A DNA stretch of 64,000 nucleotides from Macrostomum lignano (GCA_002269645.1 NIVC01001269.1:124001-188000), one strand, 5' to 3'; numbered from the stretch's first letter, positions 41,709 to 64,000 are shown. The notes: generated by a model not told the origin, from the letters alone. Program-made: numbers and translations.

Positions 41709-42225
41709 GGTTAGGAATAAAGCTGCAAGAGTGGATGTATTAAATTCTGTAATTTCTGCTGGTTCTGACACCCGTGCAAAATTTTGAATTTTGCGAAAGA
41801 TTACGTAATTAACAACGTTTTAAGCAGCGTTTCCGTTCAATCCAGACACCCGGTAGACATTATCACATTCCAGTAACACTCTTTTATTTGCAAAACAAAA
41901 TTATCTCTTAGGCTAACCACTACCTTTTCTTTGATTTGAATTATTCTATATTTTATTATAAAATTTATTATAGAATTTGGAGGCATGGGGACCATATCCA
42001 TATATTAATATCCCTTTTGGCTTTTACTCCTATATTGGACTTGATAGTAATGAAAATAATAATAGAGACATTAGAAAAAAACAAATGAATATTTATCAAA
42101 TAGACTAGATAGTAAATTAAAAATTCTAGAATTAAGACTCCAATTTTAGGCCAATGTTAATAAACTAATACAAAGCCGGCTTTTTCTTTGAGAAATTAGT
42201 TTTGTTTTGTATGACTAGTGATGAT

Positions 42226-42483: not shown

Positions 42484-42782
42484 CTTAGTATGTAATGAGT
42501 TATGCAAGCTGCACAAAGTGTATTACTACTGTTAGTATTGTAAAAGCATTTCTGCTTCACCAACCTGCCCTATTGAATCGGCACTATCATTCATTTCTTC
42601 ACATTGTTTTATTCAGCAATTGGCATCTCTAATGCTTGGCAGAGCTGCTCTGTAAATCTGTAGAGCTGCAGATCTACAAGCCTTACATAAGCAGAAGACC
42701 GTTGAATAGAAAAAGAGAGGATAAAAAAGCAGAAAGCAGGCAACAATCGGCGGCTGTGGCAGGCCGCCAAGGCCCCAATTTT

Positions 42783-45700
42783 ATGACAGTAGCAGCCGAG
42801 GCAGGCCAGCCTCGCCAAACTCTGCCTGTTGACCAATTAAATAGCAAAACTTATCGCGGCTCTGGCAGCATCATGATGCCCGGAGGTCAAGCTGCTCAGA
42901 ATCGGTCGCCGCAGCAACCGTTAGACCAGCCACCGCAGCAGCCGCAGCCATCGAAAACAGTTCGCCGTCATCCCAATGCTGCCGAGCCAACCCGAGCCGA
43001 GCTGTTGAAGTACCTGGCCTGTCTCGAAGGCGAGTTAGCCGCCAGAGACGCTGCCATTGACAGCTTGCGTCAGCAGAGACAGGAGCAGCTGTTGCAGCAG
43101 GCTCGCAATGGTCGCTACGGCCTGGCCGATCCATACGCTGCTTTGCAACGGGATAGCGAGATCAACTCCACGCCCGGCTTAGTGACGTCATTCGGAGCAT
43201 TCTGCGAATCCGACATTGACGAAGCGGCTTTGAAATCGATGTATGACAGCGAATTGGCTGCTCTGGAGAATCTTATCGATATGCAGAGTCGAGCTCAGCA
43301 ACGGATGCGCGAGCAGATCAATCAGGTTGAACGGCGGTACAGGCGAGTCTGCTCGGAGCTCGAGACCGAACGGCGCAAGCACGAGAAGGACGCCGCGGAG
43401 GGGGACGACGTGCTGGCTGGGCTGGAGAAGGAGCGGGAGCGGTTGCGGTGTGAGGTGAGCAGTTTGGATTAACGGATTTGGGTTAGTGGGTTAGATTGTG
43501 AACTGAATGGTATTCTGGCTACCGTTCAGGCTACGATATGAAGGGATGAGATGCAGGCTACGTTATGAATGAAAGGATGAGATGCAGGCCACGATATGAA
43601 GGGATGAGATGCAGGCTACCGTATGAAGGGATGAGATGCAGGCTACGTTATGAATGAAAGGATGAGATGCAGGCCACGATATGAAGGGATGAGATGCAGG
43701 CTACCGTATGAAGGGATGAGATGCAGGCTACCGTATGAAGGGATGAGATGCAGGCGACAATATGAATGGAGGGATGAGATGCAGGCTACAATATGAATGA
43801 AGAGATGAGATGCAGGCCACGATATGAAATGATGACATGCAGGCTACCGTATGAAGGGATGAGATGCAGGCTACGTTATGAATGAAGGGATGAGATGCAG
43901 GCTACGATATGAATGGATAGATGAGATGCAGGCTACGATAAGAAAGGATGAGATGCAGGCTACGGTATGAAGAGGTGAGATGCAGGCTACGATATGAATG
44001 AAAAGATGAGAAGCAGGCTACGATATGAAGGGATGAGATGCAGGCTACGGAATCAAGGGATGAGATGCAGGCTACGGAATCAAGGGATGAGATGCAGGCT
44101 ACGGAATCAAGGGATGAGATGCAGGCGATAATGGGATAACACAGTTTCAATTACAACAAGTCTGCAAACGGATCAAAAGCCCAACCCAACGCCGCGCCAT
44201 ACCAGCTGGAGTTCGAGCGCCAGCAGAGCCGCAAGCTGGACCGCGAAGTCGCCCGGGTCAGCCAGGCCCTCGCCGACGAGCGCGCCCTGTCAGATCGGCA
44301 GCGCCGCGTGGCGCTCTCTCTGATCCGCGACCGGCGCGCCCTGACCAGCCGGTTGAGCGCCCTGCAGTCGCGCTGCCAGCAGCTCGAACGCGAAGCCGCC
44401 GCTGCCGAGGCCGCAGCCGCCGCCGAACTAGAAGCCGCCGCGTTGGCGAATCGAGTCGACGCCGAGCAGCGTCGAGCTCGGGACCTCGCCGCCGAGGTTG
44501 AACGACTGCGAGCCCTGCTAGCGGCGGCCAGCCACCCAGCCAGTCAGCCCGGCGGCCTGTTAAAGGTCAAGCCGGAGCCTCCGGTCCGACGGACGCCCGG
44601 CCCGACTGTGACAGCGGCGGCGGCGGCGGCGGCGGCTTCCTCGAAGCAGCAACAGCCGGCAGGCGCGAAATCTTCGACAAAGCATTCTCAGCAGCAGCAG
44701 CAGCAGCAGCAGCAGGTTTGTGCAGTGAATGGGAAGTGACTCTAATTTGCGTATGTGTTTAATCTCTACAAAGAGTTTGTATAGATTATTTTTTAGACTA
44801 GACAGTCTAATTGAAGTGTCGGTTGAATTTTTGTCAGTAAAGTGTGACAGTGACTAAAATGTGACAGTAGAATGAGGCTCAAGTGTCAGTAAGTTGGGGC
44901 TAAATGTGTCAGTAATATGTGACTAAAATTTGTCAGTAGAATGAGACTTGTGTGTCAGTTAATTGGAGCAAAAATGTGTCAGTAAATTGAAGCTGAAATG
45001 TGTCAGTAAATTGTGGCTAAAATGTGTCAGTAAATTTGGGCTAAAATGTGTCAGTAGAATGAGGCTTGAGTGTGTCAGTAAAGTGCGGCTAAAATGTGTC
45101 AGTTAATTGGGGCTAAAATGTGTCAGTAAATTGGGGCTGAAATGTGTCAGTAAATTGGGGCTAAAATGTGTCAGTAAATTGGGGCTAAAATGTGTCAGTA
45201 AATTGGGGCTGAAATGTGTCAGTAAATTGGGGCTAAAATGTGTCAGTAAATTGGGGCTAAAATGTGTCAGTAAATTGGGGCTGAAATGTGTCAGTAAATT
45301 GGGGCTAAAATGTGTCAGTAAATTGGGGCTAAAATGTGTCAGTAAATTGGGGCTGAAATGTGTCAGTAAATTGGGGCTAAAATGTGTCAGTAAATTGGGG
45401 CTAAAATGTGTCAGTAAATTGGGGCTAAAATGTGTCAGTAAATTGGGACTAAAATGTGTCAGTAAATTGGGGCTAAAATGTGTCAGTAAATTGGGGCTGA
45501 AATTTGTCAGTAATATGGGGCTGAAATGTGTCAGTTTGTAAACAAAATTGAGTGTTCGGTGGCAAAATAACACATTTATTATTAATAAATCATATTTACT
45601 TTGCTAATCGTTGCCTCTAAATTTCGACGCTTAATTTTGTTTAAAGAAATCTATCTAATATTCTAACATGCCGCTTGTGATGAGTTGTTAACACGACGAT

Positions 45701-48700
45701 TTAATATTTCGCTTCGGATAACGAGTCATAATAACTGTTAATGTTTTTCTAAACTCATATTTATGTTATCTTAATTGTTTTGCTATCAAGTGCTTTGAGT
45801 GCTTTAGCTGAAATCAGATATTCACTCTTTGTCTGATTATTAATCAGTTTTTTATTTCCTTAATTGTTTTAAAAGCTCGCCTTGATATCTAGTCAGACCT
45901 GTTTCTTATGCCCAAGGACGTCAAGGAAAAATTAGACGTCTGGATTGGAAGTAGGCGATTTAATAACATCACAGCTACAATTGCTTACCCAAGAGCACAA
46001 ATTGTCAATAATGTCGCATTATTTAATATTTAGTAACCCCGGTTTCTTTGTTAATAAAAATTTGTTATAATGAATACAATCTATGGGAAAAATCGATTAT
46101 TTTATTGCAAAACTTTTTTATTTTTATGATTTTTTAATCCAAATCCATTATTGGTTGTAGATTTCTTTCTTAGAAATCTGCCTCACCTCGCGTTCCTGTT
46201 ATGGCAATCGAAAATCACAGAATACAGACAGAATATGATCAATAAATAACCATATTGCGTTGTGAACTTTTACCTGATTGTTTAATCACTGATGCCACAT
46301 TGTACTTATATATAAATATTATTGCAGTGTTTTGTATCTGTGCAAACGTAATGCTTAGGGCCTTCAAATATTGATTTTCAATAATTTTATTGTGTTTTAT
46401 GCGACCAAAATCCTGTTTTTAAAAATTTATGTTGTATATTTTTTAATTAAAGCAAACATGTACTCCATGTCCCTTCTATTGTGTGCATGTACTCAGTAGT
46501 AGCATGTATAGTAAATTATTATTTACATGTACATTATAAACCAATGTTAAAAAATTGAATATTAAAGATTCAGATTGAGTATAAAAAGTAATGGGTAAAA
46601 TTATTAACTAAGTGTGAAGACTGCCTACATTTTTGATGCTTTTCTCTCTGGTAAATAATTGCGCAAGCTTTTTTCTATTCAAACGATGCACTTTCATGCA
46701 CACAGCAATCTGTATATTGTAACTATTTTGCTCGTTTTGACGGTCATTTGTGTTTATATCTGTTTATAGTATATATCTATATATATATCTATCTATAGAA
46801 GCTCTAACTTTTATACCTTAACAATGGTTATAACAGTAACACTGTGCATATAGATATGCTTAATAATCCTCATTATAACAAAGCAACATGTTTGCTTGGC
46901 TTTTCTCTGTCTTTTTTGGCGTGTAACACATTGCTAAATAATAATAACAACAACAACTAATTTAACAATTAACAGCGTTTGCAGTTCAAATTATTTATAA
47001 TCTGATGCTTAACTTGTTGGCCTGTTTTAGTCTCTATTAGCTTTGGACATAGACATTTTGCCTAAGCTACACTTTGAGAGCGAGGGGAGGCTATTTGTGG
47101 GGTCGAAGCCCCAACCACCACTCACTACCATAGACTATTAATTTGTTTTTCTAATAAATAAGCTTCATAAATTCCCGCGCAGTCAATAGAGTTTTGGCCA
47201 TAGACATTTAAGTTACACTTTGAGAGCGAAAGGAGGGGGTGTTGGGGCGGAGCGCCGGAGTCCCACTCACTACCATAGACTATATAGTTTTGGCCAGAAA
47301 CCACCACCACCAGGCTCTAGTCAACATTGAAAATTCCATTATTAATTTTTAAAAATCTAAAACAAAAGTAAACGGAACTGACTAACGGTTAATCGTATGT
47401 ACTTGGGATGTACTTTATATTACACATATATTACCGTTTTTGCCAGTAGATATAGATGAGACCTGCGAAATCCTTTATACATACTCGTACTGCTATAATG
47501 TGAGGATTAATTGCACTTGCTTTTCCGGCAGTTTAGCAGAATAATTTTATTGCCCGTTGATCTGTCGGGGGGATCTCTGGCTCTCTGCGTGGCACTTCTT
47601 GGGATCTTGGGATTTTAAAAAAAGTATTTTTGTTGGTTAAGCGTGTGTTATTGCATAGCCAGTTGTAGTGTAGCATATGAAGTATGAAGTTTATGTATTG
47701 TATAATTTACAAAGCTTTTTACCAATTTTCAACCGGTAGACTAACTGCCATTATGAGGCAATTGAAGATTCGAAGACTTCTGCTGACTGTTACTCAGACC
47801 TGTCTGCTTCGATCGGATCAGGCAATGGTGAGTCGGTAGTGAGATGATTGAATATATAGTAATTTAACTTACTGAAGTACTTTTTTACGAGCGTAGTGTG
47901 CTGTATTTGCAGACTGTAGCTCGTACTATAGCCTGTATTATAAAGCCTGTACTGTAAACTTTAATATACAGATTGTACTGTAGCCTGTAGTATACAGTCT
48001 GTACTGTAGTATACAGTCTACTGTAGTATACAGTCTGTACTGTAGTATACAGTCTGTACTGTAGTATACAGTCTGTACTGTAGTATACAGTCTGTACTGT
48101 AGTATACAGTCTGTACTGTAGCCTGTAGTATACAGTCTGTACTGTAGCCTGTAGTATACAGTCTGTACTGTAGCCTGTAGTATACAGTCTGTACTGTATG
48201 TAGTCTGTATAAGACTCGTACAACACTAGCAGTTGTACATTGATGTCACCGCCAATCAATCCAGACAGAAGCAGCGGCTCGATCTCCTGCAATATCCGTG
48301 TGTCTGTTCGTTTGCCCCGCCTTGGCAGTCTGCCAATCGTCTGTCTGGCAGGTGTCAGACGCCTAGCATTGGGGTCGCTTAGCAACAGACAGGACGCTGT
48401 CGATCGAATTCGATTATCGATTGACGATTGCGCCAATCAACTGCTGGTGGAGTGCCTGGGTGCTGATGAGGCTGATTTGGAGATGCTTCAGGTAAGCTTT
48501 TGTGAATTTGTAAGATTTTAAGATTGTAAGATTTTGTGGTCTGTGTACAGCCTGCTGTATTGTCTGTGTACAGCCTGTGTTATTGTCTGTGTACAGCCTG
48601 TGGTATTGTTTGTGTACAGCCTGCTGTATTGTCTGTGTACAGCCTGTGTTATTGTCTGTGTACAGCCTGTGGTATTGTTTGTGTACAGCCTGCTGTATTG

Positions 48701-49781
48701 TCTGTGTACAGCCTGTGTTATTGTCTGTGTACAGCCTGTGGTATTGTTTGTGTACAGCCTGCTGTATTGTCTGTGTACAGCCTGTGTTATTGTCTGTGTA
48801 CAGCCTGTAGTATTGTTTGTGTACAGCCTGCTGTATTGTCTGTGTACAGCCAGCTGTATTGTCTGTGTACAGCCTGCTGTATTGTCTGTGTACAGCCTGC
48901 TGTATTGTCTGTGTACAGCCAGCTGTATTGTCTGTGTACAGCCTGCTGTATTGTCTGTGTACAGCCTGTGGTACTGCCTGTGTACAGCCTGTGTTATGAT
49001 ATGTGTACAGCCTGTATTATAGATCGTGTACAACGTGTTGCATTCTGTGTACAGCCTGTTGTAGTGTCTGTATACAGCCTGTTGTAGTTTCTGTGTACAG
49101 CCTGTTGTAGTGTCTGTGTACAGCCTGTATTATGGACCGTGTACATCGTGTGGTATATTCTGTGTACAGCCTGTACCAACTGTCCCCAATGGTCAAAGCC
49201 CATGGGGGTGCTTCAGCGCTCTGCAGGTACATTGGGTACTTGCTCATCAGCTGAGATCATTTGTGAATTTAAACCCCGCAGTCCCGCTGCTACGAACTGT
49301 CTGGGCCAACAGCTGTGCCGGCATCACCGTCGCCTGTGATTCAAGGCACAGTCGGCATTGAAGATCCCGCCGAGGCCAGCGGCTGCAGTCTGGCCAGCGC
49401 TGTGGCCACCGGATTTCCGCCCGGCTGGATTCGCCGCTGCCAGCTGACGCTGTGGCGCCACTCTTGCCTGATCCTGGCCGGGCCGCTGCACTGCAGCAAG
49501 CGGCACGCTGCCCGGCACCTGGCGGAGGCGATGCAGCGACGGGCACAGCTGGACGGCCTGTCAATGCGGCAGCTGAGCCACGACTGCCTGGACTGGGAGG
49601 CCTTCGATGCCTGGCTGGCCGCGGCGGGACTGGGCGACGACTCCGATGCTGATGATGATGCTGATGCTGATGATGCCAATGATGCTGGCCGTGATTCTGC
49701 GGCTACTGATGGCGGTGAAGATAGCCCGGCGCTATGGTGAGGGAGGCAGGCAGACAGACAGACAGACAGACACTAAGATAA

Positions 49782-49813
<32 letters not shown>

Positions 49814-49877
49814 GCACAGACAGACAGACAGAAAGACTGACAGACAGACATAAAGACTGACAGACAGACAGACAGGC

Positions 49878-49910
<33 letters not shown>

Positions 49911-50018
49911 GGCAGGCAGGCAGGCAGGCACAGGCAGACAGACAGACTGACAGACAGACAGACAGATAGACAGGCACAGACAGACAGACAGAAAGACTGA
50001 CAGACAGACATAAAGACT

Positions 50019-50074
<56 letters not shown>

Positions 50075-53000
50075 GGCAGGCACAGGCAGACATACAGACA
50101 GACAGGCAGGCACAGGCAGACAGACAGGCAGGCACAGGCAGACAGACAGGCAGACACTAAGACACTAAGACAGACAGACACTAAGACAGACAGACAGGCC
50201 AGCAGACCATATGAGCAATGGCTTTAACCAATTCCAGGCAAATGAACGCATCGCAGCAGCGCAACCAGCCGCAGGTTCTGCTGCTGCAGCTGCACAGACT
50301 GGAGTTCGTGCTGGACAGCCCATCGTTGGCCAGCTTGCTGCACCGCTGTCGGCGCAGTAATCGACAACAATCTAGCCGACGTCTTGGTGGTCGTCAAAAA
50401 GGTCGGTATCGTCGGCGGCTGATACTTTTAGGCAGTCTGGGCGCCAGCGACCTGACCGGGGTGCCGCAGTCTCTGCTGCTGGACGCTGTGCCCTATGCCG
50501 GCTGGTGAGGCTTTGTGGGGTATTAACTGTTAAGTTGAAGTGACACCTAATTTTAAAGGGCATTCTGAAAACTGATGAAATGTGTCAGTAGTCAGGTGTC
50601 GATAGGATGTGTCAGTAGGTCAGGTGTCGATAAGATGTGTCAGTAGTCAGGTGTCGATAGGATGTGTCAGTAGGTCAGGTGTCGATAAGATGTGTCAGTA
50701 GTCAGGTGTCGATAGGATGTGTCAGTAGGTCAGGTGTCGATAAGATCTGTCTATAGGTCAGGTGTCGATAAGATTTGTCTATAGGTCAGGTGTCGATAAG
50801 ATTTGTCTATAGGTCAGGTGTCGATAAGATCTGTCTATAGGTCAGGCGTCGATAAAATCTGTCTATAGGTCAGGTGTCGATAAGATGTGTCAGTAGTCAG
50901 GTGTCGATAGGATGTGTCAGTAGGTCAGGTGTCGATAAGATCTGTCAGTAGGTCAGGTGTCGATAAGATGTGTCAGTAGGTCAGGTGTCGATAAGATGTG
51001 TCAGTAGGTCAGGTGTCGATAAGATGTGTCAGTAGGTCAGGTGTCGATAAGATGTGTCAGTAGGTCAGGTGTCGATAAGATCTGTCTATAGGTCAGGTGT
51101 CGATAAGATTTGTCTATAGGTCAGGTGTCGATAAGATTTGTCTATAGGTCAGGTGTCGATAAGATCTGTCTATAGGTCAGGCGTCGATAAAATCTGTCTA
51201 TAGGTCAGGTGTCGATAAGATGTGTCAGTAGGTCAGGTGTCGATAAGATGTGTCAGTAGGTCAGGTGTCGATAAGATGTGTTAGTAGGTCTGGTGTCGAT
51301 AATATGTGTCAGTAGGTCAGGTGTCGATAAGATGTGTTAGTAGGTCAGGTGTCGATAAGATGTGTCAGTTGGTCAGGTGTAATCTGCTCACCATTCTCAC
51401 TCCATAATCTGCTCACCCTAGCTGGACTCTACTCTCAGTCCTGGAGCAGCCGGTCTCTGGTTTGGCATATCGATGTCTTAAACTTCGATGGCGGCAAATC
51501 CTTGCTGAGTCTGTCTCAACATCGACACGATTCTCCAGCTTCGCTGACTCGATGCCGCCAATTCTGAGTTGGATTGGAAACCTGCCGGAGCAGTGCAACA
51601 GATGCTTGATGAAGATGCTCAGTTCGTTGGACAGGCAGAGAAGTCTGGACCATCCAGTCGGGCCGTCAATGTTTTTGTCGTGTCCGGTGACTTTGGATTC
51701 GGATCTGCTAGAGGAGCAGGTAATATACTGTTACTGTTTTGTATATCTAGTTCATATTATTGCTCGTAGAGTAGGACATGGTCCAATGAACCAACCTACT
51801 GACATATCGGCCCTGAACCTACTGAGAAATCGTCCTGAACCTACTGAGAAATCGGCCCTGAACCTACTGAGAAATCGGCCCTGAACCTACTGAGAAATCG
51901 GCCCTGAACCTACTGAGAAATCGCCTCTGAACTTTCTGAGAAATCGCCCTGAACTTTCTGAGAAATCGCTCTGAACCTACTGAGAAATCGCCCTGAACTT
52001 TCTGAGAAATCGCTCTGAACCTACTGAGAAATCAGCCCTGAACCTACTGAGAAATCGCCCTGAACCTACTGAGAAATCGCCCTGAACCTACTGAGAAATC
52101 AGCCCTGAACCTACTGAGAAATCGGCCCTGAACCTACTGAGAAATCGTCCCTGAACCTACTGACATATCGGCCCTGAACCTACTGAGAAATCGTCCTGAA
52201 CCTACTGAGAAATCGGCCCTGAACCTACTGAGAAATCGGCCCTGAACCTACTGAGAAATCGGCCCTGAACCTACTGAGAAATCGCCTCTGAACTTTCTGA
52301 GAAATCGCCCTGAACTTTCTGAGAAATCGCTCTGAACCTACTGAGAAATCGCCCTGAACTTTCTGAGAAATCGCTCTGAACCTACTGAGAAATCAGCCCT
52401 GAACCTACTGAGAAATCGCCCTGAACCTACTGAGAAATCGCCCTGAACCTACTGAGAAATCAGCCCTGAACCTACTGAGAAATCGGCCCTGAACCTACTG
52501 AGAAATCAGCCCTGAACCTACTGAGAAATCAGCCCTGAACCTACTGAGAAATCAGCCCTGAACCTACTGAGAAATCGTCCCTGAACCTACTGAGAAATCG
52601 TCCTTGAACCTACTGAGAAATCGTCCCTGAACCTACTGAGAAATCGTCCCTGAGCCTACTGAGAAATCGTCCCTGAGCCTACTGAGAAATCGTCCCTGAA
52701 CCTACTGAGAAGTCGTCCCTGAACCTACTGAGAAATCAGTCCTGAACCTACTGAGAAATCAGCCCTGAACCTACTGAGAAATCGGCCCTGAACCTACTGA
52801 GAAATCGGCCCTGAGCCTACTGAAATCAGTCCTGAACCTACTGAGAAATCAGCCCTGAACCTACTGAGAAATCGTCCCTGAACCTACTGAGAAATCGTCC
52901 CTGAACCTACTGAAAAATCAGTCCTGAACCTACTGAGAAATCAGTCCTGAACCTACTGAGAAATCAGAACTGAACCTACTGAGAAATCGGCCCTGAACCT

Positions 53001-56000: not shown

Positions 56001-57653
56001 TGGGCGAACCGCCGGCCGACCCCGGGCGCGGTGCCGCCGCAAGCTTCGCCGGTGGCGGCACTCAGGTCAGCGCCGAGATTTGTTGAGTATAGCGCCACCT
56101 CAGTTAGGCGCTATGAGCCAGCACTCCAGCACTTCTGTTTAATCCAGTTTATTGAATCACCTTACTAATCTACTGACAAATGCGTCTGAATTTCTGGAAC
56201 TTCCTACTGATCCGGCCTTCTAATACGCTATCACAAATCCTTTCTTAGAAATCACGCTGGGGTCTTCTGAGAAATCGCCTCGTTGACTTTCTGAGAAATC
56301 GCCTCGTTAACTTTCTAAGAAATCGCCTCAGCGACTCCTTAGAAATCGCCTCTAGGCCTTCTAAGAAATCGCCTCTAGGCCTTCTAAGAAATCGCCTCTA
56401 GGCCTCCTAAGAAATCGCCTCTAGGCCTTCTAAGAAATCGCCTCTAGGCCTCCTAAGAAATCGCCTCTAGGCCTCCTAAGAAATCGCCTCTAGGCCTCCT
56501 AAGAAATCGCCTCTAGGCCTTCTAAGAAATCGCCTCTAGGCCTCCTAAGAAATCGCCTCTAGGCCTCCTAAGAAATCGCCTCTAGGCCTCCTAGGAAATC
56601 GCCTCTAGGCCTTCCTAAAAATCGCCTCTAGGCCTTCTAAGAAATCGCCTCTAGGCCTTCTTAGAAATCGCTTCTAGGCCTTTTAAGAAATCGCCTCTAA
56701 GCCTCCTGAGAAATCGCCTCGGGACCTCCTGAGAAATCGCATCGAAGGGCCACCCGACAAATCGCCTGAGGTCTCCTGAGAAATCGCCTCGGGGACTTCC
56801 TGAGAAATCGCATCGAAGGGCCACCCGACAAATCGCCTGAGGTCTCCTGAGAAATCGCCTCGGGGACTTCCTGAGAAATCGCATCGAAGGGCCACCCGAC
56901 AAATCGCCTGAGGTCTCCTGAGAAATCGCCTCGGGGACTTCCTGAGAAATCGCATCGAAGGGCCACCCGACAAATCGCCTGAGGTCTCCTGAGAAATCGC
57001 CTCGGGGACTTCCTGAGAAATCGCATCGAAGGGCCACCCGACAAATCGCCTGAGGTCTCCTGAGAAATCGCCTCGGGGACTTCCTGAGAAATCGCATCGA
57101 AGGGCCACCCGACAAATCGCCTGAGGTCTCCTGAGAAATCGCCTCGGGGACTTCCTGAGAAATCGCATCGAAGGGCCACCCGACAAATCGCCTGAGGTCT
57201 CCTGAGAAATCGCCTCGGGGACTTCCTGAGAAATCGCATCGAAGGGCCACCCGACAAATCGCCTGAGGTCTCCTGAGAAATCGCCTCTAGGCCTCCTGAG
57301 AAATCGCCACGGGGTACCTTAGAAATCGCATGAATCGCTAAAAAGGCATTTTTCAAGTCACGAATTCATTAGGGATTCATTAATAATCTTTCCAGACTCT
57401 GTTCCGGCGTAGAAGGAATCTGGCCGCTTCATCTTCGCTGTCGGAGACTACGAACTCGTCAGCTTCGTCCCTGCTGCCGCCTTCCACCGGGTTCTCGCTG
57501 TCCTCATTGACTAGCTCGGCTTCTTCTGGCTCGCTGCTCAACGCCGCGGTTGTCAACCGGCGAAGGCAGTTATTCGGCGGCGGCGGCGGCGGCTCCTCTT
57601 CTTCAGCTTCGTCAACGTCGTTACGTCGACATCGGCATCAGAGCTACAATTAG
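42783..57653 (+). CDS. CTTNBP2: Cortactin-binding protein 2-like (CortBP2 coiled-coil N-terminus plus NAV/CTTNBP2-type degenerate P-loop domain)
   Basis: Exons 42783-43454, 44206-44715, 47740-47827, 48214-48491, 49282-49736, 50238-50504, 51422-51719, 54827-56065, 57396-57653 with compatible phases. N-terminal ELLKYLACLEGELAARD, DPYAALQRD, AEGDDV..GLEKERERL|LEFE; C-terminal LILAGP, VGPSMFLSCPV, WLANLWN. The start codon, the join across 44716-47739 and the last exon (alternative stop at 56086) are less certain. Confidence 0.78.
43520..44125. repeat. 27-31-bp minisatellite, CTTNBP2 intron 1
   Basis: Unit gatatgaa(tgaa)gggatgagatgcaggctac. Confidence 0.92.
44870..45540. repeat. 24-bp minisatellite, CTTNBP2 intron 2
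   Basis: Unit aaatgtgtcagtaaattggggct(a/g); 8-aa period in the ORF track. Confidence 0.95.
47975..48200. repeat. 19-bp minisatellite, CTTNBP2 intron 3
   Basis: Unit gtagtatacagtctgtact. Confidence 0.92.
48538..49180. repeat. 23-bp minisatellite with 69-bp trimer organisation, CTTNBP2 intron 4
   Basis: Alternating cctgctgtattgtctgtgtacag / cctgtgttattgtctgtgtacag / cctgtggtattgtttgtgtacag. Confidence 0.92.
49745..50200. repeat. (GACA)n compound microsatellite, CTTNBP2 intron 5
   Basis: gacagacagaca with ggca variants. Confidence 0.97.
50578..51380. repeat. 27/28-bp minisatellite, CTTNBP2 intron 6
   Basis: Unit tgtgtcagtaggtcaggtgtcgataaga. Confidence 0.95.
51795..54752. repeat. 23-bp minisatellite (~128 copies), CTTNBP2 intron 7
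   Basis: Unit gaacctactgagaaatc(gg/ag/gt)ccct. Confidence 0.97.
55036..55742 (+). repeat. Coding 21-bp tandem repeat (7-aa period, ~33 units) in the CTTNBP2 exon
   Basis: QLQPDQP / KLQLDPE / KLQSDPE / KLQPEQQ / SLQSEQQ; stop-free and in frame with the non-repetitive flanks. Confidence 0.9.
56265..57330. repeat. Compound array: 22/23-bp unit (56265-56700), then a 71-bp trimeric unit x~8
   Basis: ctaagaaatcgcctctaggcct, then ctcctgagaaatcgcctcggggacttcctgagaaatcgcatcgaagggccacccgacaaatcgcctgaggt; 71-aa period in the ORF track. Confidence 0.95.
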
Positions 57654-57669
57654 CATGCTAGGACTGGAT

Positions 57670-57703
<34 letters not shown>

Positions 57704-57887
57704 CCTTTTTCTCTGTGTGTTTACTGTTTACTACTTATAGTAGTTTTATTATTTTAATTAGATACTTAAAATCCCGACAATTTGCCAAGGCATCATTAAA
57801 TGAGAATTCTGAAAGTGAAACGCTATTTTCAAACAAATGACATTACTTCCGATTGAAAGTAAGCCAGTCGTGGAACAGGAGTCAAAT

Positions 57888-58018
57888 AATCCCCATAGGA
57901 AATAGATAATCCCCATAGGAAATAGATAATCCCCATAGGAAATAGATAATCCCCATAGGAAATAGATAATCCCCATAGGAAATAGATAATCCCCATAGGA
58001 AATAGATAATCCCCATAA
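57888..58018. repeat. 20-bp minisatellite (~6 copies)
   Basis: Unit ataatccccataggaaatag. Confidence 0.93.
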
Positions 58019-58554
58019 ATCTCTAAGTTAATTAAGATAACTCAAGTCAGGTGACATGACAATGAAAACGAGTGAGTCTGAATCAGAAGTTATGTTTCAA
58101 AATGTGCTACTGCTAAGCTACCGTGTGTGCTTTATTTATTTACTATCCACATATTTTAGATAAATTCAAAATCAAGGCGTGCTTTTTCTGTATTTTTTAT
58201 TCTTCCAGCTCACAATATACCATAATTTTTCTTTCGCTCTACTTGCTCTACTAGGTGTAAGTAGCATATAATTTAGCTTTTATCTAGATATCATTTTTTA
58301 TTTCGACGCAGTTTACAGGGCATACTATGAAGGCGCCAGGTTTTCTAAATCGCTTAAATTACAGATAGAAAATGTTCTGCTTGCAATTCGGTTTAGAATA
58401 TACATATCTTATTGCCTGATTGGCCATGTTAATACCTTTTGTTGTACTTGATTGTTGCCTTGGTATATTTTTTTAAATTTTGGTAGTTATTAATTGAATG
58501 TAAGTTCAACATAATCCGCCCTGTCCTTCCTAAAAATCGCTCCTGCATAAAAAA

Positions 58555-59465
58555 ACACCCTCTCCTTCATAAGAATTCTCCTCTCCTTCATAAGAATTCT
58601 CCTCTCCTTCATTAAAACTGTCCTCTCCTTCATTAGAATTGTCCTCTCCTTCATTAGAATTGTCCTCTCCTTCATAAGAATTCTCCTCTCCTTCATAAGA
58701 ATTGTCCTCTCCTTCATTAAAACTGTCCTCTCCTTCATTAGAATTGTCCTCTCCTTCATTAGAATTGTCCTCTCCTTCATAAGAATTGTCCTCTCCTTCA
58801 TAAGAATTGTCCTCTCCTTCATAAGAATTGTCCCCTCCTTCATTAGAATTGTCCTCTCCTTCATTAGAATTGTCCTCTCCTTCATTAGAATTGTCCTCTC
58901 CTTCATAAGAATTGTCCTCTCCTTCATAAGAATTGTCCTCTCCTTCATAAGAATTGTCCTCTCCTTCATAAGAATTGTCCTCTCCTTCATTAGAATTGTC
59001 CTCTCCTTCATTAGAATTGTCCTCTCCTTCATAAGAATTGTCCTCTCCTTCATTAGAATTGTCCTCTCCTTCATAAGAATTGTCCTCTCCTTTATAAGAA
59101 TTGTCCTCTCGTTCATAAAAATCACCCTCTCCTTCATAGGAATCGTTCCTAAATCGTAAGAATCCTCCTTCACAAGTATCGCTTCTTCTTCATAAGAATC
59201 GCCCTCTCCTTCAAAGGATCGCTCCTTGTTCATTAGAATCGCCCTCTCCTTCATTAGAATCTCTCCTTCTTCATAAGAACCGCCCTCTCCTTCATAGAAA
59301 TCGCCCTCTCCTTCATAGAAATCTCTCCTTCATAAGAATCTCTCCTTCTTCATAAGAACCGCCCTCTCCTTCATAGAAATCGCTCCTTCTTCATAAGAAT
59401 CGCCCTCTCCTTCATAAGAATCTCTCCTTCATTAGAATCAGCACTCTTTCATAAAAATCCCCCTG
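58555..59465. repeat. 21-bp minisatellite directly upstream of PDCD10
   Basis: Unit ttcat(a/t)agaattgtcctctcc; gives a spurious (MKERTIL)n ORF on the - strand. Confidence 0.95.
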
Positions 59466-59616
59466 TCCGTCATGAGAATCGCCCTGTTCTCCCTACGAAA
59501 TCGCTCTCACGGTGCAGCTAACCTTCGCCCTCAGCCAGCGCACAAGGTCCTGAATTGCCGGTGCGAACTCAAAGAAGACACAGCCAGCAATAGAAAGCAG
59601 CCCAGCTGTCAAAGCA

Positions 59617-60330
59617 ATGTCGGCCTACAACAGAGGCGGAATGGCTGTGCCCGGCAACTCGGAGGACGACCTGTCATCAGCTGGCCAGTCCGCGGCCCCC
59701 AGCCCGGCAGTGAGGGAGAGCATGGTGCTGCAGTACCTCATCCAGCCAGTCATCGCCAGCCTGGAGCCGATGTCCGCCTCTCATGCCACCACACTGCGGC
59801 AGGCGTTCAACAGAGTGGAGCAGCACAACCCCGGCTTCTGCTGCGCATTCGTTGAGAACCTGCTGAGGCGCGGCGATCTGGACGTGAATAACGACATTAA
59901 CTTTCACGAGACTCTGCTCAGGCTGGCCTATGAAGAGGAGCGGCAGGCCCCCGCCGCTGGCCCTTATAATCCTGCCGCCAACCCGCACCTGCTGCAGCTG
60001 GAGAAGCGGGCCAAGATGCTCAAAGAGATTCTCAGCGGCATACCTCAGCTCATTGGAGACCGGAAACGGTTCCTGGAAGCCATCAAAGACATCGCCAACG
60101 CCATCAAGGAGATGCTGGACACGGTCAGTTTGGTCACCGCGTCAATCGGCAACGCCCAGCGCAAGCAGTCGCTCGACCAGCAGAAGAAAGATTTCATTAA
60201 ATACTCGAAAACTTTCTCCAATAAATTGAAAACATTTTTCAAAGACAATTCCAAAACTGATGTGTACATCAGCGCCAATCAGCTGATCTACCAGACCAAC
60301 CTCATTCTCAAGGCTGTTCGAGACTACTGA
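59617..60330 (+). CDS. PDCD10: Programmed cell death protein 10 / CCM3, single coding exon
   Basis: TLRQAFNRVEQHNPG, INFHETLLRLA, LKEILSGIP..IGDRKRFLEAIKDIANAIKEMLDTV, QKKDFIKYSKTFSNKLKTFFKD, SANQLIYQTNLIL match the PDCD10 dimerisation and FAT-homology domains. Confidence 0.96.
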   Translation: MSAYNRGGMAVPGNSEDDLSSAGQSAAPSPAVRESMVLQYLIQPVIASLEPMSASHATTLRQAFNRVEQHNPGFCCAFVENLLRRGDLDVNNDINFHETLLRLAYEEERQAPAAGPYNPAANPHLLQLEKRAKMLKEILSGIPQLIGDRKRFLEAIKDIANAIKEMLDTVSLVTASIGNAQRKQSLDQQKKDFIKYSKTFSNKLKTFFKDNSKTDVYISANQLIYQTNLILKAVRDY

Positions 60331-60887
60331 TAATCGATTTATTGAACTTCACTGCTGCACAGAGGCTCCAAAATCGTAAACAAATTATGGTTTTTCTAGA
60401 AATCAGCAAACTTCAAAATATTTGGTTAATAAATAAACAAAATGCAAAATGTTTAACATGGTTTCGTGATGTTATGCTGTTTCGTATTTCCATTTTTTAT
60501 GTTACGTTTTATCCAGTCTAATGTTTAATCATGTTTTCTAAGCGCTCCCCATTTGTTAATTAAATACGGATATTTTTAAACAAAAATTGCAACAAATGCT
60601 GCCCGCCTCATTCACACTACTTATAGTAAGTAGAACGCGTATCGGTAAAGATCAAAATGGTTGATAATTTGTTTTGTAAAACGTTTGCTTCAATCAGAAT
60701 TAATAAACCAGGTATTTAAATATTTTGAGGATCTGAAATCGGCCTTATTTATTATTTCTGTTATATAAATATTTATTATATATTATTCAATGCTTAACTT
60801 TATAGCAAAGCTTATTGTCTTGTTTATCAATAATATTTTAGCCACTAGGTATGTTGATTAGCACTATATATTTGATGCTATACTTCT

Positions 60888-61532
60888 TCAGGCTAGATTA
60901 GCAATCCATTAGATTCCTTATTAACTCGGACTAGATTAGCAATCCATTAGATCCCTTATTAGCTCGGACTAGATTAGCAATCCATTAGATTCCTAATTAT
61001 CTCAGGCTAGATTAGCAACCCATTAGATTCCTTATTAACTCGGACTAGATTAGCAATCCATTAGATTCCTAATTATCTCAGGCTAGATTAGCAACCCATT
61101 AGATTCCTAATTATCTCAGGCTAGATTAGCAATCCATTAGATCCCTTATTAACTCGGACTAGATTAGCAATCCATTAGATCCCTTATTAACTCGGACTAG
61201 ATTAGCAATCCATTAGATCCCTTATTAACTCGGGCTAGATTAGCAATCCATTAGATTCCCTATTAACTCGGACTAGATTAGCAATCCATTAGATTCTTTA
61301 TTATCTCAGGCTAGATTAGCAATCCATTAGATTCATTATTATCTCAGGCTAGATTAGCAATCCATTAGATTCCTTATTATCTCAAGCTAGATTAGCAATC
61401 CATTAGATTCCTTAATATCTCAGGCTAGATTAGCAATCCATTAGATTCCTTATTATCTCAAACCAGATTAGCAATCCATTAGATTCCTTATCCTTATTAA
61501 CTCGAGCTAGATTAGCAATCCATTAGATTCCG
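60888..61532. repeat. 38-bp minisatellite (~17 copies) between PDCD10 and ARMH3
   Basis: Unit ctagattagcaatccattagattccttatt(atctcagg/aactcgga). Confidence 0.95.
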
Positions 61533-61568
61533 TATTCATCACTGGTTTATAACTGCACTTCAGGCGCA

Positions 61569-64000
61569 ATGCATTTTGAAGCAAATGACGATCTGCTCAA
61601 AGGCAAGCAACGTGCTCAGTCGCTTAAAGTCGGGATGAAAGAGAAAGTTGTGCAACTCTACGATAGGCATTTCTCTGTGAGTTAGTTGCATTATAGTTTT
61701 CAGTAATTAAGTAAGTATGCTGGCTTTATGAGAATTTCTCTAATAAAAGAATACTTCAGTACTTTGTTTTTTAATAAAATTGTATATGCTATACTACTTT
61801 TTTTACTAACAGTAGAGTAGTTAGAATGTTTTGCGTATTCTTGTGTATTTGAAAGAAAATGTCGCAATTAAACAGGGCGAAGACATCTCTGGCGGATCGG
61901 ACAGTTTCTGGAACGAATTCTTTCTTTTGCGTGCCAACGTGCGCTACCTTCAGGCGCATTTCGAACGATGCGCCTGGGACGAATTGGCCTGCCAGAAGCC
62001 CGCAATCCGGCGCTTATTTGGCCACTGCACAGCGCCGCTGCAAAATCATCCAGCCATGGGCCAGGACGCCATTCGCCAGGCCAACGCATTGCAAACTCTC
62101 GCCTCTCTGATTCGAGGAGCTTTCAGCTGTCCGCCGACTGCTGTGGCCGCGGCCGAGGCGGCTGCAGTCGTCGGCGGCGGCGGCGTCAGCGTCAACGTCG
62201 GGGACGTCGACGAGCAGCAAATGGACAGTCAGCGCCCGAATCATCCGAATCTGGATTTGCTGATGCCGCCTAACGATGCGGAGTCTATTATGCAGGTATG
62301 TGCCGATATGTTGTATAGACAGTTTTATTGGCTTGTTTAAACAGGAATCTTGCTGATCAGTGATCAATACTAATCAACATTCTAGCCGATATGTTGTGTA
62401 GACATCTTTATTGGCTTGTTTAAACAGTAATCTTACTGATCAATACGAGTGCTAATCATCACGCTAGCCGATATGTTGTGTAGACAACTTTATTTGATTG
62501 TTTAGATAGCATTTTTACTGATCAATACTAATCAACATGCTAGCCGATATGTTGTGTAGACAACTTTATTGGGTTGTTTAGATAGCAATTTCACTGATCA
62601 ATACTAATCAGCATGATAGCCGATATGTTGTGTAGACAATTTTATTGGCTTGTTTAAACAGTAATTTCACTGATCAATACTAATCAACATGCTAGGCGAT
62701 ATGTTGTGTAGACAACTTTATTGGGTTGTTTAGATAGCATTTTCACTGATCAATACTAGTCAGCATGATAGCCGATATGTTGTGTAGACAACTTTATAAT
62801 GATCAAACCTAATTGCTTTTTCTGAAATTTAGGTTCGAAAAATAGCTTACCAATATGTTTCGTATTTAACTTTTTGAAGTACAAAATATTTACCATAATT
62901 AGCCAGAAAAAAACACTTGCTGAGATTTTTCAACTATTGGGAATTTCAAACTGCTAACTGTAAAACTCGCATTTACGAGCCGTGAAAGCGATTAATCTTG
63001 AATTTTTATTATAATTCGATCTTGCTACTTGCAGTAAGATGAGAGTAAATTGTTGGAAATTTAAATAAAAACAATTGCAGGATCTTCTTCACCGCCTCGC
63101 CTGTTGTTTATCCGACGATGTAGTCCAGCTTCCAATTAAAGCGCTGGCTATTAACCTGCTAGTTACTATGGCAACTGCCTGCGATCTACAATACAACCCC
63201 ATGCTGAGCTACCTGGTCTCCAGTCGGGTGTTCGACTGCTGCCTGCAGCTTTTCGCCTCCACTGAGCTGCGGCGAGAGTTTGGCGACTCCGTTTGCACCC
63301 TGCTGGCCATCATGCTGCAGGCGCACCGGCACAATGTACGTGTCTGTGTGTGTGTGTGTGTGTGTCTGCTTGTCCTGTCTGTCTGTCTGTCTGTCTGTCT
63401 GTCTTTCTGTCTGTATTTGTGACTGTCTGTCCGTCTGTCTGTCTGTCTGTCTGTATTTGTGACTGTCTGTCCGTCTGTCTGTCTGTCTGTCTGTATTTGT
63501 GACTGTCTGTCTGTCTGTATTTGTGACTGTCTGTCCGTCTGTATTTGTGACTGTCTGTCTGTCTCTATTTGTGACTGTCTGTCTGTCTGTCTGTCTGACT
63601 GTGTGTCTGTCTTTGTGTGTGTGTGTGTGTGTTTGTGTGTCTGCTTGTTTGTGTGTGTGTGTGTGTGTGTGTGTCTGTGTCTGTGTGTCTGTCTGTCTTA
63701 GTGTCTGTCTGTCTGTCTCTCTGTCTGTCTCTCTGTTAGTCCGTATTTTCACCGATGTATCTGTCTATTAATGTATCTTAAGAATTAAAAAGCTGCCGTA
63801 ATCTTTCAGATGGTGAACCCTTGCCTAGTTAAGCTTGCGGTTTTGGACGACAATCTCGTGCTCAATGTGAGCTGAGTGTAAAAATCAACAATCTGTACAC
63901 GTATGTGTAATATGTATGCGTATTCGTTAATGTGGAATATTTTTAATACTATTTCAGGGCTTTTCCTACGTGTTGTCACTCTCACTAGCGCAGTATAATG
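61569..64000 (+). CDS. ARMH3: Armadillo-like helical domain-containing protein 3 (C10orf76/UPF0668), 5' part; continues past the window end
   Basis: Exons 61569-61676, 61876-62295, 63081-63335, 63810-63866, 63958->64000, all phase 0. KEKVVQLYD, FWNEFFLLRAN, NALQTLASLIRG, INLLVTMAT, VNPCLVKLAVLDD match human ARMH3 motifs. Confidence 0.92.
62300..62800. repeat. ~76-bp tandem repeat (~6 copies), ARMH3 intron 2
   Basis: Unit tagccgatatgttgtgtagacaactttattggcttgtttaaacagtaatttcactgatcaatactaatcaacatgc. Confidence 0.9.
63340..63735. repeat. (GT)n/(GTCT)n compound microsatellite, ARMH3 intron 3
   Basis: Seen directly in the sequence. Confidence 0.95.

What the first reader, a model, noticed from the sequence alone, without database searches (positions are those of the whole stretch)
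42783..64000. Two STRIPAK-subunit genes (CTTNBP2-like and PDCD10/CCM3) adjacent, with ARMH3, in a tight co-oriented cluster: candidate trans-spliced operon
Seen: three genes in tandem on the + strand with gaps of only ~2.0 kb (57653 to 59617) and ~1.2 kb (60330 to 61569), mostly filled by minisatellite. A strong splice acceptor (actgcacttcag, ending 61563) sits 5 nt before the ARMH3 ATG, with no upstream exon evident. Known: CTTNBP2/CTTNBP2NL and PDCD10 are both subunits of the striatin-PP2A STRIPAK complex and are unlinked in human; flatworms use spliced-leader trans-splicing, and operons are reported there. Inference: this may be a polycistronic unit co-expressing subunits of one complex, which is uncommon in animals.
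Basis: partly seen in the sequence, partly recalled or inferred. Interest (0 to 1): 0.72.

Follow-up and report, generated by a model that had tools for sequence, protein, structure and literature searches.

The report
Ordinary flatworm spliced-leader operon cluster
This stretch of the flatworm Macrostomum lignano genome holds four same-strand genes that the published transcript-based annotation already groups into two multi-gene transcription units resolved by spliced-leader trans-splicing, a layout that about 15% of this worm's genes share, so it is a routine case, and the neighbouring STRIPAK genes are probably a coincidence.

Summary
The window is M. lignano Mlig_3_7 contig NIVC01001269.1. 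The coordinates, gaps (1,963 and 1,233 bp, each about 52% tandem repeat) and the CAG acceptor ending at 61563 are correct.

- g1 (42783-44739) is a complete CTTNBP2NL-type protein. It ends in the conserved tail QVC(A)VNGK*.
- g2 (47740-57653) is a fast-evolving protein with a NAV1/CTTNBP2-type AAA+ lid. Its reading frame opens directly after an AG, in frame with the 3' ATG of the spliced leader (SL).

So there are four genes, and g2 separates the two STRIPAK genes.

GenBank locus tags follow transcription-unit names. g1 and g2 share one prefix. PDCD10 and ARMH3 share another in a sister copy of the locus. Two ARMH3 copies are annotated 5'-partial, starting 2 nt after the predicted acceptor. 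The third copy has that acceptor mutated and is annotated differently.

This supports trans-spliced polycistronic units for g1+g2 and PDCD10+ARMH3. Nothing links g2 to PDCD10, so a single four-gene operon is unproven.

Operons with repeat-inflated spacers are already described as common in this species. PDCD10 has different neighbours in the nemertean Lineus. The find is a new member of a known kind, of low to moderate interest.

The parts
42783..44739 (+). g1: CTTNBP2NL-type gene (GenBank BOX15_Mlig009869g1, 401 aa). Exons 42783-43454 and 44206-44736, stop codon 44737-44739.
   Evidence: Pfam CortBP2 6e-45. The exon model reproduces P0129 exactly. The C-terminal QVCAVNGK* matches the C-terminal ends of Octopus, Schistosoma and other lophotrochozoan CTTNBP2NL-type proteins.
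44740..47739 (+). g1-g2 spacer, 3,000 bp. It includes a 24-mer minisatellite (44854-45535) and AATAAA signals at 45584, 46053, 46241 and 47153.
   Evidence: 2,285 bp remain after subtracting tandem repeats.
47726..47739 (+). Acceptor TTTTCAACCGGTAG in front of g2. It is the inferred SL trans-splice site and is also usable as a cis acceptor.
   Evidence: The deposited 5'-partial CDS of Mlig009869g2 starts at 47740, the first base after the AG. SL ...TTGCATG joined to ACT AAC TGC is in frame.
47740..57653 (+). g2: 943-aa protein (Mlig009869g2, 'partial') with a degenerate P-loop region and a NAV1-type AAA+ lid. Exons 47740-47827, 48265-48491, 49282-49736, 50238-50504, 51422-51719, 54827-56065 and 57396-57650, stop codon 57651-57653.
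   Evidence: Exact exon model. Pfam AAA_lid_NAV1 scores 28.9 bits against a cut-off of 27. The first Met is at residue 103. No homologue outside M. lignano was found among 1.84 billion representatives.
57654..59616 (+). g2-PDCD10 spacer, 1,963 bp. It holds (TG)n at 57673-57701, a 20-mer array at 57886-58017, a 21-mer array at 58559-59421, and a unique AT-rich stretch at 58018-58558.
   Evidence: 939 bp remain after tandem repeats are removed. Array length differs between the three copies of the locus.
59506..59517 (+). Best candidate SL acceptor for PDCD10 (ctcacggtgcag|CTAACC), preceded by a pyrimidine-rich run. This is an inference only.
   Evidence: The deposited CDS is 'complete', so the transcript model includes the in-frame stop at 59548-59550, or else it starts within 2 nt of the ATG. 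Joining the SL at 59518 would give a 12-codon upstream ORF that ends before the ATG.
59617..60330 (+). PDCD10/CCM3 gene, intronless, 237 aa.
   Evidence: Pfam PDCD10_N 3e-13 and PDC10_C 2e-20. Exact product found on contigs NIVC01001269.1 and NIVC01000006.1.
60331..61563 (+). PDCD10-ARMH3 spacer, 1,233 bp. It includes AATAAA at 60428, 60432 and 60702, possible cis donors at 60626 (GTAAGT) and 60849 (TAG|GTATGT), and a 38-mer minisatellite at 60888-61536.
61552..61563 (+). Acceptor actgcacttcag in front of ARMH3.
   Evidence: It matches YTNCAG (PMC8629364). The deposited ARMH3 CDS in the window copy and the L002 copy begins 'AMHFE', at 61566. The nearest in-frame stop is at 61524, so the transcript model starts at 61564-61566. 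The acceptor is mutated to TCATGG in the third copy, L003, whose ARMH3 is annotated 'complete' under a different unit name.
61569..64000 (+). ARMH3 gene (Mlig017614g1, 715 aa, 'partial'). Exons 61569-61676, 61876-62295, 63081-63335, 63810-63866 and 63958 onward. The gene continues beyond the end of the window.
   Evidence: Pfam ARMH3_C 1e-60.

Best explanation
The region is a run of four co-oriented Macrostomum lignano genes: a CTTNBP2NL-type gene (g1), a degenerate NAV/CTTNBP2-type AAA+ gene (g2), PDCD10 and ARMH3. They are expressed in the way already described for this species, as multi-gene primary transcripts whose downstream cistrons are released by 3' processing and capped by trans-splicing of the 35-nt spliced leader (SL) at an AG acceptor. 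Minisatellites inflate the spacers.

Shown indirectly, through the deposited transcript-based annotation:
- g1+g2 form one transcription unit.
- PDCD10+ARMH3 form one transcription unit in a sister copy of the locus.
- The 5' ends of g2 and ARMH3 lie at AG acceptors.

Inferred:
- g2, which has no ATG of its own for 102 codons, takes its start codon from the 3' AUG of the SL.
- PDCD10 is also trans-spliced, probably near 59517.
- The two units may be read from one promoter just upstream of 42630.
- The proximity of two STRIPAK-type genes is most likely incidental.
For: Operons are common in this species: 30% of genes are SL-spliced and 15% lie in operons, repeats inflate operon spacers, and the published operon rule is a repeat-adjusted distance of at most 1 kb (PMC8629364). 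Transcription units clustered at 95% identity share a name prefix, and TBONE cuts units into genes at SL and poly(A) signals (PMC5730564).

Locus tags: Mlig009869g1 is the CortBP2 gene and Mlig009869g2 is the 943-aa gene, both on the window's contig. Mlig005486g1 is PDCD10 (contig 700485) and Mlig005486g3 is ARMH3 (contig 1110054).

The ARMH3 CDS is 5'-partial and starts 2 nt after the CAG in two copies. The copy with a mutated acceptor is annotated differently. The g2 CDS starts at the first base after an AG, in frame with the SL ATG, and its first Met is at residue 103. The 3' ATG of flatworm SLs can act as initiator (Cheng et al. 2006, as cited in PMC12582326).

Repeat-adjusted spacers are at most 939 bp and at most 584 bp. 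No gene is called on the opposite strand inside the cluster.
Against: No SL-bearing read or spanning read could be inspected here. All transcript evidence is second-hand, through locus tags and CDS start coordinates. No unit name links g2 to PDCD10. In the window's own copy ARMH3 carries a different prefix (Mlig017614) from the PDCD10 cluster. In two of the three copies the g2 model starts about 20 nt after the AG rather than at it. The g1-g2 spacer is still 2,285 bp after removing tandem repeats, above the published 1-kb rule. The three copies are 97-99% identical, so they are not independent evidence. The spacers contain unique AT-rich DNA that could hold promoters.
Confidence: 0.6

Rival explanations
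1. The genes are separate, closely spaced transcription units. PDCD10, and possibly ARMH3, have their own promoters in the unique AT-rich parts of the spacers (58018-58558 and 60450-60887). Where SL trans-splicing occurs, it only trims a monocistronic outron made largely of minisatellite.
For: Most SL-spliced genes in M. lignano (about 60%) are not in operons (PMC8629364). No shared unit name bridges g2 and PDCD10. The window's ARMH3 has its own unit name. Promoters in this species usually lie within 2 kb upstream (PMC5730564).
Against: PDCD10 and ARMH3 share a unit prefix in the L002 copy. Only 27 nt separate the 38-mer array from the ARMH3 acceptor. At most 584 non-repeat bp lie between the PDCD10 stop and the ARMH3 acceptor, and part of that is the PDCD10 3' UTR.
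Confidence: 0.25
2. ARMH3 is not trans-spliced. The acceptor at 61563 is the 3' end of a conventional 5'-UTR intron that starts at the donor TAG|GTATGT (60849) or ATA|GTAAGT (60626) and contains the 38-mer minisatellite.
For: Both donors are present in the spacer on the right strand.
Against: The deposited models in two copies end exactly at the acceptor, with a 5'-partial CDS and no upstream exon. TBONE sets such ends from SL-trimmed reads.
Confidence: 0.07
3. g1 and g2 are one CTTNBP2 gene. A long isoform joins the phase-0 donor CAG|GTTTGT (44715/44716) to the phase-0 acceptor at 47739/47740. This gives a CortBP2 coiled coil plus a degenerate AAA+ domain. The short isoform reads through the donor into VCAVNGK*. 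On this view the annotated split reflects isoforms or an internal SL site, not two cistrons.
For: The join is in frame. Full-length animal CTTNBP2 belongs to the McrB-derived CTTNBP2/NAV AAA+ lineage and has a degenerate NTPase (PMC10602043). g2 carries the NAV1-type lid. An unrelated lophotrochozoan transcript has the same CAG GTT TGT at the start of the conserved tail. Parasitic flatworms share 3' splice sites between cis- and trans-splicing extensively (PMC12582326).
Against: GTTTGT is unlike the other donors at this locus (GTGAG, GTAAG, GTAAT, GTCAG). The in-frame join has a 1 in 3 chance expectation. The tail-terminated form is the conserved full-length protein in other phyla. The older paralogue Mlig019445g4 has no AAA+ gene within 10 kb downstream.
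Confidence: 0.2
4. The adjacency is functional: selection keeps CTTNBP2NL-type and PDCD10/CCM3 genes together so that STRIPAK subunits are made in step.
For: Both families are STRIPAK components in mammals (PMC6323126). They lie 14.9 kb apart on one strand.
Against: g2 lies between them and no transcript link crosses into PDCD10. The older CTTNBP2NL paralogue has no PDCD10 nearby. In Lineus, PDCD10 sits among unrelated genes and on a different chromosome from ARMH3. With about 20 STRIPAK loci among roughly 30,000 genes, a pair within two genes of each other is expected in a few percent of genomes (my rough estimate).
Confidence: 0.1

Closest known systems
Macrostomum lignano SL operons (Wudarski et al. 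2017; Ustyantsev and Berezikov 2021)
   Same: Same species, same 35-nt SL, same acceptor motif YTNCAG. Same-strand neighbours, with spacers that shrink below 1 kb once repeats are removed. Multi-gene transcription units are cut at SL sites. Most such operons have 2 or 3 genes.
   Different: This locus is not singled out in any paper I could search. The g1-g2 spacer exceeds the 1-kb rule when only tandem repeats are subtracted. The four-gene reading lacks a transcript link in the middle.
C. elegans and Ciona operons
   Same: Polycistronic precursors are resolved by SL trans-splicing, and the genes in one operon are usually functionally unrelated.
   Different: The spacers here are 1-3 kb of minisatellite-rich DNA rather than about 100 bp. 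A single SL type is reported for this species, with no SL2-like specialisation known (PMC8629364; PMC12582326).
Flatworm SL 3'-terminal AUG used as initiator (Cheng et al. 2006, cited in PMC12582326)
   Same: The g2 reading frame is open from the first base after the acceptor and is in frame with the SL ATG.
   Different: Use of the SL AUG is inferred from coordinates only. For ARMH3 the SL AUG is out of frame and would give a 25-codon overlapping upstream ORF.
Vertebrate CTTNBP2 and CTTNBP2NL
   Same: g1 has the CortBP2 coiled coil, and its closest named relatives are CTTNBP2NL proteins. Together g1 and g2 hold the two domain types of full-length CTTNBP2.
   Different: Here the two parts are separate reading frames, with a stop codon and 3 kb between them. 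No ankyrin repeats were detected. g2 is too divergent to align with anything outside M. lignano.

Membership tests
SL trans-spliced operon (M. lignano rule, PMC8629364) | Immediately adjacent genes on the same strand, with no gene on the opposite strand between them | tested here: met
   The called genes in L001 and L004 are all on the + strand in the order g1, g2, PDCD10, ARMH3, with consecutive accessions PAA70057, 70058 and 70060.
SL trans-spliced operon (M. lignano rule, PMC8629364) | The downstream gene carries the SL at its 5' end | tested here: inconclusive
   No reads were available. Indirect evidence: the ARMH3 and g2 models start at or within 2 nt of an AG, with a 5'-partial CDS. The status of PDCD10 is unknown.
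SL trans-spliced operon (M. lignano rule, PMC8629364) | Repeat-adjusted intergenic distance of at most 1 kb | tested here: inconclusive
   The upper bound is 939 bp for g2 to PDCD10 and 584 bp for PDCD10 to ARMH3, both within the rule. For g1 to g2 it is 2,285 bp with tandem repeats only subtracted. No RepeatMasker track or UTR ends were at hand.
SL trans-spliced operon (M. lignano rule, PMC8629364) | A primary transcript that spans both genes | tested here: inconclusive
   A shared transcription-unit prefix exists for g1/g2 (all copies) and for PDCD10/ARMH3 (L002 copy). None exists for g2/PDCD10. This is second-hand evidence.
PDCD10/CCM3 | N-terminal dimerisation domain plus C-terminal FAT-homology domain | tested here: met
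   PF20929 scores 49.5 bits and PF06840 scores 72.9 bits, both above their cut-offs. The protein is 47% identical to Lineus PDCD10.
CTTNBP2 / CTTNBP2NL | N-terminal CortBP2 coiled-coil domain | tested here: met
   PF09727 scores 154 bits over profile positions 4-185 of 187. The best named hits are CTTNBP2NL proteins.
CTTNBP2 / CTTNBP2NL | Physical membership of a striatin-PP2A (STRIPAK) complex | not testable with these tools
   Known for the mammalian proteins only (PMC6323126).
ARMH3 (C10orf76) | ARMH3_C domain and full-length similarity to animal ARMH3 | tested here: met
   PF08427 scores 205.7 bits. There are 160 homologues at 95-98% query coverage.
CTTNBP2/NAV (McrB-derived) AAA+ proteins, for g2 | NAV1-type AAA+ lid domain | tested here: met
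   PF25408 scores 28.9 bits against a cut-off of 27, a marginal pass, at residues 388-465.
CTTNBP2/NAV (McrB-derived) AAA+ proteins, for g2 | Recognisable P-loop NTPase core, or homology to NAV/CTTNBP2 outside the lid | tested here: not met
   The only candidate is the degenerate stretch LILAGPLHCSKRHAA. phmmer found no relative outside M. lignano. There were no PDB hits. The AlphaFold model had mean pLDDT 40.6 and was unusable.

The most novel reading that the evidence does not exclude
An ancestral full-length CTTNBP2 (CortBP2 coiled coil plus degenerate McrB-type AAA+ domain) survives in M. lignano as two cistrons of one transcription unit. The downstream half has lost any start codon of its own and is translated from the AUG donated by the spliced leader. 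The same promoter also drives PDCD10 and ARMH3, so two STRIPAK components are co-transcribed. This would be an example of SL trans-splicing permitting gene fission and holding subunits of one complex together.
Probability: 0.12. Interest if true: 0.55.

Novelty: new member of a known kind. Interest (0 to 1): 0.27.

Why it matters
If the cluster is one operon, it would be a rare animal case of two subunits of one signalling complex sharing a promoter. It would also be a convenient test locus in the only flatworm with stable transgenesis. The evidence points instead to routine M. lignano operon architecture, already catalogued genome-wide, with no conserved linkage. Its main value is as a worked example. 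The g2 frame that depends on the SL AUG, and the natural acceptor mutation in one of the three copies, are small, testable points about how trans-splicing shapes coding sequence.

Tried and rejected
- Direct read evidence. Exact-protein look-ups found only the GenBank genome, with no RNA-seq assemblies of M. lignano.
- Logan transcripts of CTTNBP2NL-type and PDCD10 homologues come from unidentified other species. They carry no M. lignano SL.
- Supplements of PMC5816591, PMC5730564 and PMC12582326 held no entry for these genes. A full-text search for Mlig005486 found nothing.
- Synteny in Schistosoma and Octopus could not be tested, because those products are not on record for look-up.
- The SL sequence itself does not occur in the window.
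- Rfam and tRNA scans found nothing.
- The spacers have no similarity to the other loci in hand.
- The promoter/terminator scan uses bacterial consensus sequences, so it says nothing about this animal genome.
- Structure prediction of g2 gave mean pLDDT 40.6, so I ran no fold search.
- Comparing the three copies of the locus for constraint was uninformative, because they are 97-99% identical.
- P0002, the '80% identical' PDCD10 hit, is a mis-predicted version of the same gene and not a paralogue.


Full report
**Origin of the window.** The PDCD10 product encoded at 59617-60330 is found, residue for residue, on two contigs of GCA_002269645.1. One of them, NIVC01001269.1, matches window 49617-64000 at 100% identity. 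GCA_002269645.1 is the Macrostomum lignano Mlig_3_7 assembly (Wudarski et al. 2017, PMC5730564). The same locus occurs three times in that assembly: on this contig, on NIVC01000006.1 (L002) and on NIVC01000166.1 (L003). Unique sequence is 97-99% identical between the copies. The assembly is known to carry such duplicates, so the copies are not independent evolutionary evidence.

**Checking the observation.** Most of it holds.
- PDCD10 is an intronless ORF carrying both Pfam PDCD10 domains.
- ARMH3 starts at ATG 61569. The exons I read from the sequence reproduce the deposited 715-aa protein, which has ARMH3_C at 1e-60.
- The two gaps are 1,963 bp and 1,233 bp, of which 1,024 bp and 649 bp are tandem repeat, about 52% each.
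- The acceptor CTTCAG ends at 61563, five bases before the ATG.
- It fits the motif [T/C]TNCAG reported for M. lignano SL acceptors (PMC8629364). That hexamer occurs 373 times in the window against 326 expected by chance, so on its own it says little.

**The first gene is two genes.** The 'CTTNBP2-like' gene is wrong as drawn.
- GenBank has a 401-aa gene, Mlig009869g1 (exons 42783-43454 and 44206-44736, stop at 44737-44739).
- It also has a separate 943-aa gene, Mlig009869g2 (seven exons, 47740-57653).
- I rebuilt both models from the window and they translate exactly to the deposited proteins.
- g1 is a complete protein and not a fragment. Its last residues, QVCAVNGK, match the extreme C-termini of CTTNBP2NL-type proteins from Octopus (QVCVNGK), Schistosoma (HVCVNGK) and unidentified lophotrochozoan transcripts (QVCVNAK), and of the older M. 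lignano paralogue (TANGK).
- g2 has a NAV1-type AAA+ lid just above the Pfam threshold (28.9 against 27 bits) and a degenerate P-loop-like stretch.
- g2 has no detectable relative outside M. lignano among 1.84 billion representative proteins, and no PDB match.

The cluster therefore holds four genes, and g2 separates the two STRIPAK-type genes.

**What is known about the species.**
- In M. lignano 30% of genes receive one 35-nt spliced leader (SL), CGGTCTCTTACTGCGAAGACTCAATTTATTGCATG. About 15% of genes are assigned to operons, and 75% of those operons have two genes.
- Repeats are reported to inflate operon spacers. After subtracting repeats, the spacer lengths peak near 100 bp.
- The authors call an operon when the downstream gene is SL-spliced and the adjusted distance is at most 1 kb (PMC8629364).
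- The genome annotation was built from RNA-seq. Assembled 'transcriptional units' were clustered at 95% identity and given a shared name prefix. The TBONE pipeline then cut them into genes at mapped SL and poly(A) signals. Almost 7% of units were precursors with several SL sites (PMC5730564).

**Evidence from the deposited annotation.**
- The locus tags carry those unit names. g1 and g2 on the window's contig are Mlig009869g1 and Mlig009869g2, and the L003 copy has Mlig021373g1 and Mlig021373g2. These two different genes therefore come from one assembled unit.
- PDCD10 on the L003 contig is Mlig005486g1, and ARMH3 on the L002 contig is Mlig005486g3. Units are clustered by sequence, so a unit holding ARMH3 can share a prefix with a PDCD10 unit only if it also contains PDCD10 sequence. 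At least in the L002 copy, then, one assembled transcript spans both genes. This is my inference from the naming rule.
- The deposited ARMH3 proteins of the window copy and the L002 copy are flagged partial and begin 'AMHFE'. The CDS therefore starts at 61566. The nearest in-frame stop lies only 45 nt upstream of the ATG, at 61524, so a partial call means the transcript model starts at 61564-61566, directly after the CAG.
- In the L003 copy the acceptor reads ACTCATGG where the other two copies read ACTTCAGG. There ARMH3 is annotated as complete, under yet another unit name. This is a suggestive natural control. Multi-mapping of reads among near-identical copies limits its weight.
- The g2 CDS in the window copy starts at 47740, the first base after GGTAG. 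It is open for 102 codons before the first Met and is in frame with the terminal ATG of the SL. Flatworm SLs end in AUG, and that AUG can serve as initiator (Cheng et al. 2006, as cited in PMC12582326).
- In the other two copies the g2 model starts about 20 nt further in, not at an AG. The exact boundary is therefore less certain than for ARMH3.

**What remains open.**
- No unit name links g2 to PDCD10 in any copy. Whether PDCD10 is trans-spliced cannot be read from the deposited data.
- The PDCD10 CDS is 'complete'. That places the 5' end of its transcript model at or upstream of the in-frame stop at 59548-59550, or else within 2 nt of the ATG. The best-looking acceptor is GGTGCAG ending at 59517, behind a pyrimidine-rich run. 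An SL joined there would give only a 12-codon upstream ORF.
- The repeat-adjusted spacers are at most 939 bp and at most 584 bp. These are within the published rule.
- The g1-g2 spacer is still 2,285 bp with tandem repeats alone removed.
- The authors themselves note that assembled units tend to break in repeat-rich operon spacers. The missing link is thus weak evidence in either direction.
- g1 itself seems to have a conventional start. Its model 5' ends differ between copies (at or before 42630, against 42640-42642) and do not abut an AG. A mariner-type transposase remnant lies just upstream on the other strand.

**One gene or two for g1 and g2.**
- Animal CTTNBP2 belongs with the neuron navigators to a McrB-derived AAA+ lineage and has a degenerate NTPase domain (PMC10602043; PMC9877351). 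g1 plus g2 therefore together hold the two domain types of full-length CTTNBP2.
- A phase-0 donor, CAG|GTTTGT at 44715/44716, and the phase-0 acceptor at 47739/47740 would join them in frame. The same CAG GTT TGT opens the conserved tail in an unrelated species.
- Against this, that donor is unlike the other donors at the locus, and the in-frame join has a 1 in 3 chance expectation. The stop-terminated form is the conserved protein in other phyla.
- I keep a long cis-spliced isoform as a live alternative. It is not exclusive of trans-splicing at the same acceptor.

**The STRIPAK angle.**
- CTTNBP2/CTTNBP2NL and CCM3/PDCD10 are indeed STRIPAK components in mammals (PMC6323126).
- Nothing here shows that the linkage is selected. 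The older CTTNBP2NL paralogue has no PDCD10 or AAA+ gene within 10 kb.
- In the nemertean Lineus longissimus, PDCD10 lies among an acyl-CoA dehydrogenase, a WD40 gene and a B-box gene. It is on a different chromosome from ARMH3.
- Other Macrostomum genomes could not be reached with these tools.
- Given the number of STRIPAK loci and the after-the-fact nature of the observation, chance is the better explanation. This is my inference.

**Verdict.** This is a real cluster, correctly located, and a reasonable operon candidate. It is the kind of arrangement already described for about 10,000 genes in this species, and its transcription units are already in GenBank. Support is good for PDCD10+ARMH3 and for g1+g2 as trans-spliced units. 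A single four-gene operon is unproven, and functional coupling of STRIPAK subunits has weak support.

Noticed in passing
window 5576-7626 and 18949-35982: The genes upstream of the cluster are also on the + strand: an ATG9 homologue (Pfam ATG9 1e-90) and a family-31 glycoside hydrolase (alpha-glucosidase type). Every gene identified in the 64 kb (four annotated, ATG9 by Pfam) points the same way.
   Followed up: partly
window 12337-13002 (+) and 40326-41771 (-): There are two mariner/Tc1-type transposase remnants (Transposase_1, DDE_3 and HTH_29 hits). The second sits about 1 kb upstream of the g1 start and could bound its promoter region.
   Followed up: partly
L003 11942-11950 (equivalent to window 61558-61566): One of the three near-identical copies of the locus has the ARMH3 acceptor changed from TTCAGG to TCATGG. 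The change also creates an out-of-frame upstream ATG. That copy's ARMH3 is annotated differently. It is a natural splice-acceptor mutant that could be checked in RNA-seq.
   Followed up: partly
window 55039-55741, within g2 exon 6: A 21-nt tandem repeat lies inside coding sequence and encodes PEKLQLD/EQQSLQS-type heptads. Its copy number differs between copies of the locus (943-aa against 983-aa products). Pfam's FAZ1_C hit here is a repeat-driven match.
   Followed up: partly
window 43527-63736: Almost every intron and spacer holds its own minisatellite with a different unit: 27-, 24-, 26-, 23-, 28-, 23-, 20-, 21-, 38- and 76-mers, plus (CAGA)n and (TGTC)n runs. The largest is a 23-mer repeated 129 times at 51793-54750, inside g2 intron 5.
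   Followed up: no
window 59617-60330; L015 10001-12095: PDCD10 is intronless here. The Lineus orthologue of 211 aa spans 2.1 kb and so must have introns, and the neighbouring M. lignano genes have 1 to more than 6 introns. Retroposition into an existing transcription unit is one possible origin.
   Followed up: no
window 44713-44739; L007 1813-1836: The conserved C-terminal tail (Q)VCVNGK/VCVNAK of CTTNBP2NL-type proteins begins with CAG|GTTTGT in both M. lignano and an unrelated lophotrochozoan transcript. The tail may be encoded by read-through of an old splice donor.
   Followed up: partly
window 22001-30000: There is a strong composition bias, with AT skew down to -0.40 and GC skew up to +0.31. 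It lies in the region of the glycoside hydrolase gene and is presumably a long strand-biased repeat array.
   Followed up: no
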